A DNA stretch of 64,000 nucleotides, from IMG/VR virus record IMGVR_UViG_3300035698_035366, positions 186,001-250,000 of that record; one strand, 5' to 3'. Within the stretch, counting starts at the first letter, position 1. Every line of letters starts with the position of its first letter. A program made the position numbers and the translations under genes. Below the pieces are notes generated by a model, which was not told where the DNA came from, did not search any database, and worked only from the letters and a program-made list of their open reading frames with translations. Positions 838 to 60,429 of the stretch are shown one piece after another.

Positions 838-885
838 ACCTGAATCTCCTTAGTCGGAATTATATAATTATTTATCATAAAAGTG

Positions 886-916
886 TTGACTTTCTATAGG
901 GATTGTTGTATAAATA
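886..916 (+). promoter_or_regulatory. Overlapping sigma70-like and T4-late-like promoter of tmRNA
   Basis: TTGACT-N17-TATAAA; the -10 box extends to TATAAATA. Confidence 0.7.
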
Positions 917-920
917 TACT

Positions 921-1218
921 TGTAAATGCTTGATGCTAATAATAGCAAATCAGGACCCGGGCTCGTTCCCGGCATCTCCACCAACACTTCGGTGGCATCT
1001 CTTTTTTATGGGGATGAAAGGTTCGACTGGTGCGTGAAAGTTTAGTTTAGTTTACATCGGATTGGTGAGCCGACCACAAAGTAACCCGTTTTAAATGCAA
1101 ACGACAATGCTCCCGTACAGGAAATGCGCCTAGCGGCCTGATCCTGGTAGGGAAATTCCGGAGACGAATGCGATCTTCGGTGGAGTTTGGAGGGCACTCA
1201 TCATCAGGAGCCCTCCGT
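921..1218 (+). ncRNA. ssrA: Circularly permuted (two-piece) tmRNA, tag ANDNAPVQEMRLAA*
   Basis: Acceptor piece ends ...CATCTCC-A-CCA at 983; coding piece starts GGGGATG at 1010 (G3:U70 Ala determinant); resume codon GCA at 1097, stop TGA at 1139-1141; 3' hairpin GGAGGGC...GCCCTCC. Confidence 0.95.
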
Positions 1219-1219
1219 T

Positions 1220-33500: not shown

Positions 33501-33815
33501 ATGAGTGACGTAGAAGTAGTTGCCGATGTAGACATTATGACAAAGGTAAAGACTAAATCAAAACCGCCATCAATGTACAAGGTAATTTTCCATAATGACG
33601 ATTTTACCCCAATGGATTTTGTGATTAAAGTATTGATGACTATCTTTAGTAAGGATTTAGAAGAAGCTAATGCATTAATGCTCCGAATCCATGTGAAGGG
33701 AAAAGGCATCGCCGGCGTGTATAGTAAAGAAATTGCCGAAACAATGAAGAAAGAAACAATTGATGCCGCCCGCCTAAATGGCTATCCATTGAGAGTAACC
33801 ACTGAAGAAGATTAA
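33501..33815 (+). CDS. clpS: N-end-rule adaptor ClpS
   Basis: YKVIFHNDDFTPMDFV..VL...MLRIH..G.GIAGVY..EIAE...YPL. Confidence 0.95.
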   Translation: MSDVEVVADVDIMTKVKTKSKPPSMYKVIFHNDDFTPMDFVIKVLMTIFSKDLEEANALMLRIHVKGKGIAGVYSKEIAETMKKETIDAARLNGYPLRVTTEED

Positions 33816-34155: not shown

Positions 34156-35750
34156 ATGAAAATCTTTGAACATTCAAACACAGATAGAGAATATCCTCAT
34201 AATTTTGAATATGTTTTTACGATCTATGCAACCAATGACGAAGACCTGGAAAATGCCATAGAAACTATGCAGGACCCATTTGGCTATTGGTTGCAGGATA
34301 ACACTGAAGATAATTATATTTTCCTACGGCACGCTTCTAAAATTGTTGGGGGAGGATATGGTGGCAACTCAGAACAATCATATATTTTATGCAGAGATGA
34401 CCCATCTGATCTATCGCATGAAAATGTTTTTGATCATTTAGAAATAAGAATGTCAAAGCGAGATGCAGTAAAATTTAAATTGTGGTGGTGTTAATGGAAA
34501 TAATTGAATTACCAATCAACGACCGTACAGCGGGGATGTCATTTAATCAAGATGGAGAAGAGAAATACTTCTTTACAACTGATGTCGAAAAATATGATGA
34601 AATGATAGAATGGCTATTTGAATATACTGCGCACCGATTTACATTTTTAGGAACAAATAGAATTTATTTCGAAGACAAGAAGGATGCTGCAATTTTTAAG
34701 ATTGCTTGGCTATGACCATACTATTTGATGGATGTTATTTTATAGTGAATGCGGGGGTATCAGATTACCGATCTGATTGGTGTTCTGATAATATTGGAAT
34801 GTTCGATTGGAAAGTTGGGTCTAACCCAGTTGATGGTTGTTCATGTTATTTTTTTAAAAACGACGAAGATGCAATTTTATTTAAGTTATCATGTTTATAA
34901 TAATCCTTTTTGTTTTTGTTGTAGATTCATTAATCGGTAATTATATGATTGAGATTGGCTTACATTCTGAATCATTGGTTGTATCATTGATTATTGCAAC
35001 TATCCTAAGAGGTTGTTCCAATATATCAAATATATATGTAAACATGTTAAAGTTGTTTTTTAAGCACATAAATATTAAAGGTAACAGTAAAGAACACCAA
35101 AACTGGTGCCGAGATAATTTATCAATTTGTTGGTTTAAAATTGAAAACACATTTTATTTTTTAAGAAAACAGGACGCTGTACTATTCAAATTGGCACACA
35201 ATATTAATGAAGATTACACTTAAACAGTTATTGTCGCCTGATATATCAAGTGATTTCGTTGAAGCAATTGAAAGCGGTGAAGCATTTGATCTAGAAGGAA
35301 ATACGGCTTATATCATTAAGGGTGGATCAGAACTAAAAAATGAAATAGATGAGTGGTGTACTAATACATTAGAATATGAATGGGCTAGTATTGGCCCAGT
35401 ATCATATTCTATAACCGAAAAGAAAATATGCGGATGGACGTTTTTTAATGATAATGACGCACTTTTATTTAGATTGACGTGGGTATAATATGGCGATAGA
35501 TGAAAATTTGAAAGTAGATAATTGGTTTTCGTATTCCTTGTTCCTTGATTCATTTGTCCAAAAGGAATCAAATGGTATATATTTTCTTTCTCCTGAAATT
35601 ATGGAATGGTTATGTGAAACCGTTGAATATCCAATCGAAACTGAAGGCTTCGATGAAGAGGGGTTTTCTCTTGGGTTTGGATTGTATTTTGAAAAAAATG
35701 AAGATGCAACCCTATTTCGATTGACGTGGTGTAATGATAAAGATAAGTAA
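34156..35750 (+). CDS. Run of six FKL-family small ORFs
   Basis: Tails DAVKFKLW, DAAIFKIAW, DAILFKL, DAVLFKL, DALLFRLTW, DATLFRLTW. Confidence 0.7.
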
Positions 35751-36465
35751 AGAGCTTGAAGAATTATTAGTTCGAGACGATATATCTAATCAAATCTTCC
35801 ATGAACGATATATTTCCGTCAATCAATTGATAATCAATGGTGGGACACCGAATTCGGTGAGGATAGCTTATGCATTCGATGGATCATATGTGGGAACATT
35901 CAATGAGCACCTTATTATTGGTATAATTGATAAATTTCAAATTACTCCACAGCGTGCATTCCCTGAAGCAACCATATCTAAATTAGGCTGGAGTGATTTG
36001 ACAAATAAATGGTATGCATGGAATCGGGCTACATATAATAGCTTTACAATAGGTAGCCAAATTACAAAAAAAGATTTAGGATATATTCCAGATAATAAAG
36101 ATGAGTTTTTAATAGCCACGAAACGTTTTTGGGAGGATGCATGGGAGACTCCTAGAAGAAAGAAGGATGTCATTGCTATACATGATACAGAATTTGAAAA
36201 TGTATATGAAGACGAAGTCGAAGTTATGGATGAGAAAACTGGCTTAATGAAAATACACAGTGAAATTAAAAAAGGTGGGAAACTCCTTCATGGTGTCCGT
36301 GTTTCTTGGACCTATACACATGATGTTCCTAATGAAACATTAAGAGGTCAACCTGGAGGAAACTTTACCCCATATCCGAAGAATTGGGGAAGGGGAGAAT
36401 GGACCGCATTAACTATGGATGACGCTAAACAAATGGCTATGGATTTTGTAAGAAGTTTAAGTTAG
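35734..36465 (+). CDS. Hypothetical protein
   Basis: ORF track. Confidence 0.65.
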   Translation: MIKISKELEELLVRDDISNQIFHERYISVNQLIINGGTPNSVRIAYAFDGSYVGTFNEHLIIGIIDKFQITPQRAFPEATISKLGWSDLTNKWYAWNRATYNSFTIGSQITKKDLGYIPDNKDEFLIATKRFWEDAWETPRRKKDVIAIHDTEFENVYEDEVEVMDEKTGLMKIHSEIKKGGKLLHGVRVSWTYTHDVPNETLRGQPGGNFTPYPKNWGRGEWTALTMDDAKQMAMDFVRSLS

Positions 36466-36514
36466 ACTTTATTGACAAACCATATAAAAATGTTTATAAT
36501 CTAAAAGTTAAGTT

Positions 36515-36814
36515 AAATTGAGTTGTGGATTGTAGCGTGATAGTGTCAGAAAATCTATTGCTGGCGTCGAATACGGGAGTATAAACCCAAGTCTAGAGGA
36601 GTGTTATAAGAGTAAGTAACCCCACACAGGATGGTCAGGCGGGCGGAGGTGAGATTAGGAAATTGCTTCCCATTTAGAGGTAAGCGGTGAAAGCCCGCAA
36701 GCTGAAACCCGATAGCGGAACCGTAATACTATGCGTAAGTCCCAATGGTGGTTGTACTCTAGGCAAGTAGGTACTATGCGGGAGTGGAGACCCGCACAAT
36801 CTACAACTCAAATT
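36515..36814 (+). ncRNA. ~300-nt structured RNA of unknown class
   Basis: TTGACA-N17-TATAAT at 36472-36500; 16-bp terminal stem 36518-36533/36796-36811; GC-richer than flanks; no + strand ORF. Confidence 0.7.
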
Positions 36815-37099
36815 TAAATAAATAATAAGGAATAATAAGCAAAGTGGATCATCCAAATTTTTATCAAAACAGCTACACTGGATCACATATTGAAATCGTT
36901 ATGCAATTGTGTGATGAATTTGCATATGTAGTTGAAGTTAGGGGATCAGTATCAACCGCATATTTTAAGGAGAATGTAAAAAATCGTTTTTGTTTTGTTA
37001 CAAAGGAGCCTGGTATTTTATCCTTATTTTTTGATAATGGAATGGAAGCATTAAAAGCTGATAAATATTTTAATCCAGAAAAATACGAGGAAAATAAAA

Positions 37100-37363
37100 A
37101 TGAATAATATACCAACTGATCTATCCAATATCGATGATTATCCAAAGTATGATCCAAAACTTGGAGAACTGGACGAAACTATTGGAAAGGTTCTTGGTTA
37201 CGATATCATGGAAGAAGATATACTTGGTATGGCTCTTCGTAGTGGTTTTTCAGAAATGCGAATCATAGATGAAAATACAGTAGTTACCATGGACTATTCC
37301 GATAATAGAATTAATATACATATCGATAAACATAATGAAATCAACTCAGTCGGCATTGGGTAA
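37100..37363 (+). CDS. Peptidase inhibitor I78/I13-like protein
   Basis: RII.....VTMDY..NRINI..D....I..V..G. Confidence 0.75.
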   Translation: MNNIPTDLSNIDDYPKYDPKLGELDETIGKVLGYDIMEEDILGMALRSGFSEMRIIDENTVVTMDYSDNRINIHIDKHNEINSVGIG

Positions 37364-37390: not shown

Positions 37391-37957
37391 ATGTCAAAAG
37401 CAACTGTGGCGGAAAGTTATACATTACCTGAGTTATCTCAGCATGGGGTCCATTTTCTGAATGAAGGAATAACTGACAAATCTTGCGGTCAAGCAATAAA
37501 TTATATTCTGCGTGCCAACATGGATCCAAGTTGTCCGTGGAAACATATCCAGTTAATTATTAATTCTGGGGGCGGATATGTTGATTCTGGTTTTGCTTTG
37601 ATTGATGTTATGGAAACAAGTAAAATACCAGTTAGAACTCTTGGGCTTGGTACCATTGCTTCAATGGGGTTATTAATTTGCATGGCAGGTGATAAAGGCA
37701 ACAGAGCAGTAACGCCAAAAACAATGATAATGAGCCACCAATTTGCCGGTGGTGCATTCGGTAAACAACACGAACTTGTTTCATCAGCGATACATCATGA
37801 TTGGGTAGGTGATACAATTTTAAAACATTATAAAAAGCATACTGGGTTAACTGAAAAAGTAATCAAAGAAAAATTGCTTCCTGAATCTGATACATGGTTG
37901 ACCGCAACCCAGGCAAAAAAATATAAATTAATAGACAGAATTGCCAATTCATATTAA
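37391..37957 (+). CDS. clpP: ClpP protease subunit
   Basis: INSGGG.V..G, IASMG (Ser), MSHQ (His), DTWL.A.QA..Y.LID. Confidence 0.9.
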   Translation: MSKATVAESYTLPELSQHGVHFLNEGITDKSCGQAINYILRANMDPSCPWKHIQLIINSGGGYVDSGFALIDVMETSKIPVRTLGLGTIASMGLLICMAGDKGNRAVTPKTMIMSHQFAGGAFGKQHELVSSAIHHDWVGDTILKHYKKHTGLTEKVIKEKLLPESDTWLTATQAKKYKLIDRIANSY

Positions 37958-58557: not shown

Positions 58558-58881
58558 TACCTAAGCGTTAAGATCGGAGAAGCGGAAGAGTGAAACAGTT
58601 GGAGTTAATGAATGGAAAATGTGACTTAGAGATTACTTAAAGAATTACCAAATTGGCATCGAGGTGTCAAGGAGGTGAGTGGGATACGCGGAACGAGGCT
58701 GCGGGATTAACCACTATAAATAAGATCCAAACGGGCGGCGGCGCGGAGTAACACAAAGCGTCGGTAGACACAGTCGTAGTTGACAGAGTCTACGGTGGTG
58801 TAGCCGTATGCGGCAACATAACGCCACCAAAAAATAAGCAGAATTTGGGGGTGGGTTCACCGTCCGTGGCCCACCCCATAA

Positions 58882-59234: not shown

Positions 59235-59240
59235 ATTTAT

Positions 59241-59316
59241 GCCTTTCAAGCTAATCTAGAGAAAGCGACGGATTGAAGACCCGTAGAGCCTGGAGCGTAA
59301 CCAGGGAAAGGCACCA
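59241..59316 (+). tRNA. tRNA-Phe(GAA), atypical T-loop AGCGTAA
   Basis: Cloverleaf, CCA. Confidence 0.75.
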
Positions 59317-59515
59317 AACATTATTTGGTCACTGCAAAGTGTGTTAGCGACGGCTAATAGTTTAGGTGAGTATAGCACTCTTAAAGGGTACAGAACCGTC
59401 GCCTAATGCCAATGTTTTATAAGGGTTGATCCTGCCCGCGGTATCAAACCCGTGGTCTTGAATAAGGCAGGAAGCAGGACGAGGGGAGCGTTACCTCCAA
59501 CCTTTGCTAATTTAT

Positions 59516-59595
59516 AGGGGTGCCTGTATCGGTGAACTAAGCCGTCTCCAAAACGGTGCTTCGGCCTGGGAGTTCGAATCTCTCCACCCCTGCCA
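59516..59595 (+). tRNA. tRNA-Trp(CCA)
   Basis: Loop CTCCAAA, CCA end. Confidence 0.85.
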
Positions 59596-59604
59596 ATATA
59601 ATAT

Positions 59605-59689
59605 GGGAAGGTAAAGCTAGTGGCTCTAGCAAGTGGTCTGTAAAACCACTCTCTTCGGGGGCGAGGATCGATACCTCACTTTCCCACCA
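59605..59689 (+). tRNA. tRNA-Tyr(GTA)
   Basis: Loop CTGTAAA, long variable arm, CCA. Confidence 0.8.
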
Positions 59690-59891
59690 ATTAAAGCAGA
59701 TACAGTCAATAAACATTCTGCCGTAGACACCATGTGTTGGGCGCAACTCATGTTGAAAACGGGTGACCCTGTTGAGACTATATGAAGGACTTGGTCTCCT
59801 TTAATCTGCACATGGCCAGAGAATATCGAACGAGGTGGTGGCTGATCCTGTCCGGGATGGGCCGTATGTTTCATACCGGGGGCCACCCTAA

Positions 59892-59969: not shown

Positions 59970-60014
59970 AAATAATACTTGACAATAAATTGGATGTTGT
60001 TATAATACTTAAAT

Positions 60015-60245
60015 ACTGTTCGTTAATTGGACAGATTTACAACCGGGGAACTAGTCCACTACGACGCCGGAAACATTGTAAATCCCGAAAGACGATTTAG
60101 TGTGATGGTTATAAGGTTAGACGGTGTCGGTATGTGGTCAACCCGCCCGTGACGTTATAATCACAGCGCAGGCTGGAGGCCTTAATGCGGGACGCAGGTA
60201 CCCGAGGTGAGATGATAGGCCGTTAGTGGATAGGATGGGATCCAT
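60015..60245 (+). ncRNA. ~230-nt pseudoknotted RNA of unknown class
   Basis: Own TTGACA/TATAAT promoter; pairings GATTTACAA/TTGTAAATC, TCCACTA/TAGTGGA, GACGCCG/CGGTGTC. Confidence 0.55.
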
Positions 60246-60255
60246 TTATTTTTAT

Positions 60256-60330
60256 GTTCCTGATGCCGACGAAGTGAGGCCTTGGATTGCAAATCCAAAG
60301 TACCGGATGCAAGCGCCGGCGGGAACTCCA
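60256..60330 (+). tRNA. tRNA-Cys(GCA)
   Basis: Loop TTGCAAA, U73, CCA. Confidence 0.8.
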
Positions 60331-60429
60331 AAACAATACTTGACACTTATAAATAGATGTGTTAGTATTACAGAATAAGCATTGCGCTTATAACGCCATA
60401 ATGGCAGTCAACATGATAAAGGAAAAGAC

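What the first reader, a model, noticed from the sequence alone, without database searches (positions are those of the whole stretch)
36472..36814. Stand-alone ~300-nt structured RNA with its own consensus promoter
Seen: perfect TTGACA-N17-TATAAT, a 16-bp closing helix with one G-U, several GNRA-like capped hairpins (GAAA, GCAA, GAGA), and no sense ORF. I do not recognise RNase P, 6S or group I cores. It shares GAGGTGAGAT (36646-36655) with the RNA at 60204-60213. Inference: a novel large ncRNA or ribozyme.
Basis: partly seen in the sequence, partly recalled or inferred. Interest (0 to 1): 0.65.

Follow-up and report, generated by a model that had tools for sequence, protein, structure and literature searches.

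The report
Orphan noncoding cassette behind phage promoter
A salt-lake jumbo phage carries a perfect early promoter that runs into about 310 bases of GC-rich, non-coding sequence clamped by a 21-bp helix. It matches no known RNA family, has no relatives to compare with, and is probably a leader or processed RNA rather than a proven new ribozyme.

Summary
The basic observation holds. There is a perfect TTGACA-N17-TATAAT at 36472-36500 and no sense ORF as far as 36843. The interior has 50% GC, against 32-36% in the flanks. A 21-bp closing helix (36513-36533 with 36796-17, one G.U, one bulge) starts about 6 nt after the predicted transcription start.

- The 262-nt interior folds no better than shuffled sequence (z = +1.3). 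The phage's own tmRNA gives z = -2.1. The whole-element signal (z = -2.0) comes from the closing helix.
- The GNRA-capped hairpins are not robust.
- No terminator separates the element from orf87 (GTG 36844), so "stand-alone" is not shown.
- The 10-mer shared with the RNA at 60204 is within chance (P = 0.13).
- Rfam 15 gives nothing.
- No homologue turned up in phage records, viral, metagenome or genome collections, in 54 ClpP-bearing viral records searched with a covariance model, or next to homologues of the flanking genes. Other assemblies of the same phage are identical here. Covariation therefore cannot be tested.

Best reading (about 0.4): a transcribed RNA domain at the 5' end of an early operon, bounded by an RNase III-type stem.

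Rivals: a retained cis-acting leader, or an inert insertion. Y RNA, retron and MITE memberships each fail defining tests.

The parts
36472..36500 (+). Sigma-70 consensus promoter (TTGACA, 17-nt spacer, TATAAT). The predicted transcription start is about 36506-36507.
   Evidence: 12/12 match. (30 such promoters in the genome, 28 on the + strand). (all but this one and the one at 59979 are soon followed by a ribosome-binding site and a start codon). The start site is inferred from the usual 6-7 nt spacing.
36513..36533 (+). 5' arm of closing helix P1.
   Evidence: Pair probabilities are 0.79-0.96. The arm begins about 6 nt after the predicted start.
36796..36817 (+). 3' arm of closing helix P1. 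It ends 27 nt before the GTG of orf87.
   Evidence: There is one G.U (36527.36802) and a one-base bulge.
36534..36795 (+). GC-rich (0.496), purine-rich (0.60) non-coding interior.
   Evidence: composition. (no frame over 33 codons). (fold z = +1.32).
36591..36598 (+). 5' strand of predicted helix P3 (8 bp with 36757-36764).
   Evidence: mean pair probability 0.87. Thermodynamic prediction only.
36757..36764 (+). 3' strand of predicted helix P3.
36635..36705 (+). Predicted P4 domain (36635-44 paired with 36693-36705). Its apical part contains GGAGGTGAGAT.
   Evidence: probabilities 0.83-0.95. (motif counts).
36571..36588 (+). First of two similar hairpins, of the form AU(A/G)CGGGAGU-N5-CCC.
   Evidence: direct repeat D2; the motif GGGAGT-N5-CCC occurs only at these two places in the genome..
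36776..36795 (+). Second similar hairpin (GCGGG, 8-nt loop, CCCGC), stacked on the 3' arm of P1.
   Evidence: -10.2 kcal/mol, z = -2.0.
36844..37107 (+). orf87, the first gene downstream. No terminator and no strong promoter lie between it and the element. AAGGAA lies at 36827-36832.
   Evidence: called as a gene in other assemblies. (no homologue). It overlaps the start of the I78-like gene at 37100.

Best explanation
The element is the first ~310 nt of an early transcript made by host sigma-70 RNA polymerase from the promoter at 36472-36500. The transcript's 5' end pairs with sequence about 290 nt downstream to form the 21-bp helix P1, which encloses a GC-rich non-coding domain. Because no terminator follows, transcription continues into orf87, the I78-type inhibitor gene and ClpP.

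The most likely mechanism is that P1 acts as an RNase III-type processing stem, in the way that rRNA precursor stems and the early-leader sites of lambda and T7 do. Cleavage would release a ~285-305-nt RNA and leave a downstream mRNA with a short leader. The released RNA would act through single-stranded purine-rich regions and the two near-identical GGGAGU-loop hairpins, probably as a protein-binding RNA rather than as a compact ribozyme.

Shown: the promoter, the absence of coding capacity, the helix, the composition, the lack of a terminator, and the twin hairpins. Inferred: transcription, the start site, RNase III cleavage, stability and any trans function.
For: - Promoter: a 12/12 match, belonging to a set of 30.
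- Only this promoter and the one at 59979 run into non-coding sequence rather than reaching a ribosome-binding site and start codon within about 6-60 nt.
- P1: 21 bp, about -23 kcal/mol, starting about 6 nt from the predicted start. None of 1000 shuffles of the two arm regions reached the observed duplex energy.
- Seven G.U pairs would be C.A mismatches on the other strand.
- The interior GC of 0.50 matches the phage's tmRNA, tRNA region and RNA2 (0.47-0.50), not its genes (0.32-0.36).
- There is no terminator before orf87.
- Removing 36513-36817 would leave about 38 nt between the -10 hexamer and the start codon, which is the usual spacing in this phage.
- The twin hairpins are unique in the genome.
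- The phage has no RNase III gene of its own, so a host enzyme would be needed.
Against: - There is no transcript evidence; no RNA run holds the sequence.
- There is no homologue, and therefore no covariation for P1 or any other helix.
- The interior fold has z = +1.3.
- Among random genome window pairs of the same geometry, 1.3% reach the same duplex energy. P1 alone is therefore significant only at about the 0.01 level, before its placement is taken into account.
- RNase III cleavage is pure analogy.
- A stable released RNA normally shows more structure than this interior does.
Confidence: 0.4

Rival explanations
1. The element is a retained cis-acting 5' leader. The ~340-nt untranslated region stays on the orf87-I78-ClpP mRNA. 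The 5'-terminal helix protects the mRNA from 5'-end-dependent decay, or sets translation of orf87, and no separate RNA is made.
For: There is no terminator between the element and orf87. P1 begins within about 6 nt of the predicted 5' end and ends 10 nt before AAGGAA at 36827. orf87 overlaps the next gene, as in an operon.
Against: No other perfect early promoter of this phage has such a leader. No terminator/antiterminator or ribosome-binding-site-sequestering alternative pairing was seen. No riboswitch or leader family matches. A GC of 0.50 is typical of this phage's stable RNAs, not of its mRNAs.
Confidence: 0.25
2. The element is an inert insertion. A foreign or decayed inverted-repeat-bounded piece of DNA (MITE-like, or a remnant of a mobile element) landed between an ordinary early promoter and its ribosome-binding site. 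It is transcribed passively and has no function.
For: Excising 36513-36817 restores the normal promoter-to-start spacing. The element has terminal inverted repeats. Its composition is foreign to its neighbours. The interior is no more structured than chance. It is an orphan with no relatives.
Against: There is only one copy in the genome. No element with the same terminal repeats exists in the viral or genome collections. There is no clear target-site duplication. The G.U pair in P1 and the internal twin hairpins suggest the constraint acts at the RNA level.
Confidence: 0.2
3. One reading: a new large, compactly folded ncRNA or ribozyme that acts on its own.
For: It has its own promoter, is non-coding, is GC-rich and has a long closing helix. 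No known family matches.
Against: The interior fold is not better than shuffles, whereas the same test does detect the phage's tmRNA. There is no terminator. There are no homologues and so no conserved core. No known self-cleaving ribozyme model hit at E <= 10.
Confidence: 0.08
4. The element is a Y RNA-like partner of the phage's own Ro60 (TROVE) protein, with a 5'/3' stem as in Y RNAs.
For: The phage encodes a TROVE protein. Y RNAs are closed by a stem formed from their two ends (PMC4201824).
Against: The Ro-binding motif GNCGAAN0-1G is absent; the element has only GTCGAA followed by TAC. No tRNA-like domain was found. The element lies 101 kb from the Ro60 gene, whereas Y RNAs lie within about 4 kb of it. 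Better candidates carrying the motif lie next to Ro60.
Confidence: 0.04

Closest known systems
RNase III-processed early leaders and spacers: the lambda N leader, the T7 early R sites and the rRNA precursor stems (from established knowledge; not tested here).
   Same: A helix of about 20 bp in an early phage transcript, lying between a promoter and the next gene. It could be cut to separate RNA species.
   Different: Those sites are simple hairpins of 50-60 nt, or they enclose rRNA. Here the stem encloses an orphan 262-nt domain. Cleavage is untested.
T4 stable RNAs species 1 and 2 (rnaC, rnaD) and other small phage-encoded stable RNAs (from established knowledge).
   Same: Phage-encoded, promoter-driven, non-coding and of unknown function.
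   Different: The T4 RNAs lie in the tRNA cluster and are about 140 nt or less. This element is isolated, 22 kb from the tRNA cluster, and about 310 nt long. The RNA at 60007-60255 is the closer analogue of the T4 RNAs.
Bacterial and phage Y RNAs (YrlA; PMC4201824).
   Same: A closing stem made from the 5' and 3' ends. The phage encodes Ro60.
   Different: There is no GNCGAAN0-1G motif and no tRNA-like domain. The element is not near the Ro60 gene and is three times longer than a Y RNA.
Large phage-associated ncRNAs in Rfam (ROOL, GOLLD) and other large ncRNAs (HEARO, OLE, raiA).
   Same: Large non-coding RNAs found in phages, with no known function at the time of discovery.
   Different: No covariance-model match at E <= 10. 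Those families are defined by covariation across many members; this element has none.
MITEs (miniature inverted-repeat transposable elements).
   Same: About 300 bp, non-coding, with terminal inverted repeats, inserted in an intergenic spot.
   Different: It is single-copy, has no relatives with the same ends, and has no clear target duplication.
Retron msr-msd ncRNA.
   Same: Flanking inverted repeats, with AGC directly after the 5' arm.
   Different: The genome has no reverse transcriptase.

Membership tests
Any Rfam 15 family (4227 models, including RNase P, 6S, group I/II introns, ROOL, GOLLD, HEARO, riboswitches and self-cleaving ribozymes) | Covariance-model score at or above the family's gathering threshold | tested here: not met
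   One search found no hit in 36300-37000 at gathering thresholds. In one search the best hits at E <= 10 scored 13-16 bits against thresholds of 47-382 bits, and all were to irrelevant families.
Y RNA / YrlA | GNCGAAN0-1G Ro60-binding motif near the 5' end | tested here: not met
   no match in 36507-36820. The only near match is GTCGAA at 36566, followed by TAC. The motif definition comes from PMC4201824.
Y RNA / YrlA | tRNA-like domain (T and D arms) | tested here: not met
   ARAGORN and the Rfam tRNA model at E <= 10 find nothing in the element.
Y RNA / YrlA | Encoded within about 4 kb of the Ro60 gene, on the same strand | tested here: not met
   The TROVE gene is at G000:120185-121819. 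The element is at G000:222507-222820, 101 kb away, on the same strand.
Retron ncRNA | Adjacent reverse transcriptase | tested here: not met
   PF00078 is absent from the 296-kb record; the control genomes were positive. The record is about 79% complete.
Retron ncRNA | Flanking inverted repeats a1/a2 | tested here: met
   On its own this feature is not specific.
MITE | Terminal inverted repeats | tested here: met
   26-nt arms, 81% complementary.
MITE | Several copies in a genome, or related copies elsewhere | tested here: not met
   The element is single-copy in its own genome. A pattern built from the terminal repeats found nothing in viral contigs or genome contigs.
MITE | Target-site duplication | tested here: inconclusive
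   The flanks are AT-rich. A TA or TTAA can be read on both sides, but that is expected by chance.
Stand-alone sRNA gene | Own promoter and own intrinsic terminator | tested here: not met
   The promoter is present. No terminator-like site lies between 36466 and 36900 on the + strand.
RNase III processing stem | About two turns (20 bp or more) of near-perfect double-stranded RNA | tested here: met
   21 bp with one bulge and one G.U.
RNase III processing stem | Cleavage by RNase III | not testable with these tools
   This needs an in-vitro or in-vivo assay.
Riboswitch or cis-regulatory leader | Conserved aptamer plus an expression platform (a terminator or sequestration of the ribosome-binding site) | tested here: not met
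   No family match. No terminator. No alternative pairing with the AAGGAA region in the predicted folds.
Same family as the RNA at 60007-60255 | Significant similarity in sequence or structure | tested here: not met
   The covariance model R1 finds only the element itself in the genome. The local alignment gives P = 0.13.

The most novel reading that the evidence does not exclude
The element is the founding member of a new class of phage RNAs. It would be excised from an early transcript at a long closing helix and would act in trans during host takeover, for example as a decoy or scaffold that binds a host or phage protein through its twin GGGAGU-loop hairpins. It sits in an early region that also encodes a Tad6-like Thoeris inhibitor, ClpS, ClpP and a protease inhibitor.
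Probability: 0.12. Interest if true: 0.6.

Novelty: new member of a known kind. Interest (0 to 1): 0.3.

Why it matters
If the RNA is real and is released, it would add to the few known large non-coding RNAs made by lytic phages early in infection. It would come from a huge phage that also carries a two-piece tmRNA, more than 15 tRNAs, a Ro60 protein and probable Y RNAs, which together make an unusually rich RNA toolkit. As it stands, it is a single orphan sequence with no comparative or expression support. It is a candidate to keep on file and to re-test when relatives or metatranscriptomes from these salt lakes appear. It is not a discovery.

Tried and rejected
**Known families.** Rfam at gathering thresholds and at E <= 10 gave nothing.

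**Homologue searches, all negative.**
- blastn against 50,697 phage records.
- BLAST against loci around relatives of the Tad6-like and ClpP genes.
- BLAST against four whole ClpP-related viral records and one Tad6-related record. The single-sequence covariance model R1 was run on the own genome and the four ClpP-related records and on 50 further ClpP-bearing viral records.
- Exact motif scans: a 17-mer, which gave chance coding hits only, and an 18-mer.
- A terminal-repeat pattern in viral contigs and genome contigs.
- A twin-hairpin pattern in viral, metagenome and genome contigs, filtered with R1. Only the phage itself and unrelated repeat arrays (L118, L136, L232) came through.

**Synteny through the flanking genes.** Homologues of the Tad6-like protein (at most 40% identity) have no RNA-sized gap downstream. 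orf87 has no homologue at all. The topoisomerase gene found no related viral record.

**Population variation.** Two other assemblies of the same phage are 100% and 99.98% identical, and the single difference lies in the Tad6-like gene.

**Specific hypotheses rejected.**
- Retron: no reverse transcriptase.
- Y RNA: no Ro-binding motif, no tRNA-like domain, not near Ro60.
- Phage-encoded RNase III: absent.
- Permuted RNase P: no P4-type pairing can be drawn from the sequence.
- A tiny ORF behind GGAGGTGA: only 4 codons.
- A non-coding gap in L007 that looked similar is an ordinary terminator on the other strand, with no Rfam hit.
- Enrichment of GGA or GGAG motifs: not above expectation.

**Literature.** Searches found no described counterpart.

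Full report
**Setting.** The window is bases 186001-250000 of a 296-kb viral record. The same phage occurs in salt-lake metagenomes. It is also present on a contig of 362,903 bp, and proteins identical to the window's are on record on a contig of 407,795 bp. It is therefore a huge phage, and the record is partial (CheckV estimate 79%). Genome GC is 38%.

The window holds:
- a two-piece tmRNA;
- 15 tRNAs;
- a topoisomerase II large subunit and a baseplate wedge/tail-fibre connector protein;
- around the finding, an early-looking region with a Tad6-like Thoeris inhibitor (35734-36465; Pfam E = 1.4e-21), an 87-codon ORFan, an I78-type protease-inhibitor-like gene and ClpP. ClpS lies a little upstream.

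**What is in the sequence.** The promoter at 36472-36500 matches the consensus at 12 of 12 positions. The genome holds 30 such perfect promoters, where about 0.1 is expected by chance, and 28 of them are on the + strand. They form a real promoter class.

For nearly all of them, a ribosome-binding site and a start codon follow within about 6-60 nt. The exceptions are this promoter and the one at 59979-60006, which both run into GC-rich non-coding sequence. Between 36466 and 36843 no + strand frame exceeds 33 codons from stop to stop.

The closing helix pairs 36513-36533 with 36796-36817. It has 21 pairs, one bulge and one G.U, with an energy of about -23 kcal/mol. It begins about 6 nt after the predicted transcription start. 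The enclosed 262 nt have 49.6% GC and 60% purine, against 32-36% GC in the neighbouring genes. That composition matches the phage's tmRNA, tRNA region and RNA2. The model contains seven G.U pairs, which would be mismatches on the other strand. Together with the promoter, this fixes the + strand.

**What does not hold up.** The whole element folds with z = -1.99, but the interior alone gives z = +1.32; 183 of 200 shuffles fold at least as well. The same test gives z = -2.14 for the phage's tmRNA and -1.59 for RNA2. The thermodynamic signal is therefore the closing helix and nothing more.

Some inner helices are predicted with fair probability: P3 (36591-98 with 36757-64), P4 (36635-44 with 36693-705) and a hairpin at 36778-95. 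They are predictions from a single sequence.

No terminator-like site follows the element, so the transcript should run on into orf87 (GTG at 36844, AAGGAA at 36827). "Stand-alone" is therefore not shown.

The decamer shared with the RNA at 60204 occurs only at those two places on the + strand. Even so, local similarity between the two RNAs is not significant (P = 0.13), and a covariance model of the element finds only itself in the genome.

The duplex energy of the two arm regions was reached by none of 1000 shuffles. However, 1.3% of random genome window pairs of the same geometry did reach it. The case for the helix therefore rests partly on its exact placement around the non-coding island and at the transcript's 5' end.

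**Search for relatives.** Rfam 15 gave nothing useful. No similar DNA was found in any of the following:
- phage records;
- the phage's own genome;
- loci and whole records of the nearest ClpP- or Tad6-bearing viruses, by BLAST or by covariance model;
- motif, terminal-repeat or twin-hairpin pattern scans of the viral, metagenome and genome collections, filtered with the model.

The flanking genes have no close relatives among 5.8 billion proteins. The Tad6-like protein reaches at most 40% identity, and orf87 has no match at all. More distant Tad6 homologues have no such gap downstream. Other assemblies and reads of the same phage are identical across the element. Covariation, the decisive test, cannot be done with present data.

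**Internal features.** Two hairpins share the form AU(A/G)CGGGAGU-N5-CCC, at 36571-88 and 36776-93. TACTATGCG occurs twice, at 36727 and 36772. Both motifs are unique to the element in the genome. They may be paired binding sites or a trace of an internal duplication.

If 36513-36817 is removed, the distance from the -10 hexamer to the orf87 start becomes about 38 nt, which is the normal architecture of this phage's early units. The element therefore looks like a cassette placed inside an ordinary promoter-leader.

**Explanations.** I rank four, and consider two more to be excluded.
- A transcribed 5' domain whose closing helix serves as an RNase III-type processing stem, releasing a ~300-nt RNA and a short-leadered mRNA (0.4). 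The phage has no RNase III gene of its own, so a host enzyme would be needed. This step is by analogy only.
- A retained cis-acting leader that stabilises or tunes the operon mRNA (0.25).
- An inert inverted-repeat-bounded insertion (0.2). This fits the orphan status, the foreign composition and the unstructured interior. It is single-copy, however, and has no relatives with the same ends.
- A Y RNA for the phage's Ro60 (0.04). It fails the motif, tRNA-like-domain and adjacency tests.
- A retron, excluded because no reverse transcriptase was found.

**Verdict.** This is a real and unusual feature: promoter, closing helix and a GC-rich non-coding island. It belongs to no known family. It is unsupported by conservation or expression data, and its interior is not demonstrably structured. 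Interest is modest (0.3). It should be revisited when relatives or RNA data become available.

Noticed in passing
G000:C1:120185-121819 (outside the window; L027 4186-5820): The phage encodes a 544-aa TROVE-domain (Ro60-like) protein: Pfam PF05731, E = 1.1e-26 and 1.6e-18.
   Followed up: partly
G000:C1 118369, 118442, 119213 (L027 2370-3260), and 255954 and 260656 (the first is window coordinate about 69954, just beyond the window): At least five copies of a module of the form AGATCGA-N-GAGCCGAAG ... GGTTATC. It contains the Ro60-binding motif GNCGAAN0-1G of bacterial Y RNAs. Three copies lie within 2 kb upstream of the Ro60 gene on the same strand. One (255961) is followed by a T-arm-like GGGGGTTCGAATCCCTC. 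These are probable YrlA-type Y RNAs, although Rfam reported no family for them in the Ro60 region.
   Followed up: partly
G000:C1:118536-118651 (L027 2537-2652): A wcaG RNA motif (RF01761; 56.2 bits against a threshold of 42) lies in the ~2.7-kb non-coding stretch upstream of the Ro60 gene.
   Followed up: no
window 868-1219: A two-piece (circularly permuted) tmRNA: RF04321 at 79.8 bits and alpha_tmRNA at 76.3 bits. The tag reading frame ends in ...RLAA.
   Followed up: no
window 59979-60255: A second perfect promoter (59979-60006) drives about 245 nt of non-coding RNA ('RNA2'). Its GC is 0.47 and its fold z = -1.59. It has no Rfam match and ends in a weak hairpin followed by a U-rich run. It is not related to the finding.
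   Followed up: partly
window 60256-60333: A cloverleaf-folding tRNA-like sequence with a 7-bp acceptor stem, the anticodon loop TTGCAAA (GCA, Cys), an odd T arm and a 3' TCCA. ARAGORN and the Rfam tRNA model both missed it.
   Followed up: partly
window 58560-58880 and 59235-59890: More GC-rich non-coding sequence lies within the tRNA cluster. It includes GGAGGTGAG at 58671, several tRNA-like stretches with long variable arms that ARAGORN did not call, and a repeated leader ...ACCC(C)(A)TAAC before both tRNA-Glu genes.
   Followed up: no
whole genome G000: There are 30 perfect TTGACA-N16-18-TATAAT promoters, 28 on the + strand. Most have an extended -10 (TGn) and a 16-nt spacer. Many are followed by a shared leader (ATAAGCAAAC ... 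GGAGATCGAAA, then ATG).
   Followed up: partly
window 35734-36465, 37100-37363, 37391-37957; ClpS at about window 33501-33815: An early-region gene set holds a Tad6-like Thoeris inhibitor (E = 1.4e-21), an I78-type peptidase-inhibitor-like protein (E = 5.4e-6), ClpP (E = 4e-34) and ClpS. PHROGs labels the ClpP a head maturation protease.
   Followed up: partly
window 12053-12581 and 12918-13287: Two further non-coding gaps (no ORF of 70 aa or more) with GC of 0.41-0.42 and no Rfam hit at gathering thresholds.
   Followed up: no
G000:C1:117712-117892 (L027 1713-1893): A 13-bp perfect inverted repeat (TGGAATAGGAATG / CATTCCTATTCCA) encloses 155 nt of non-coding sequence upstream of the Ro60 region. 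It may be another stem-closed RNA.
   Followed up: no
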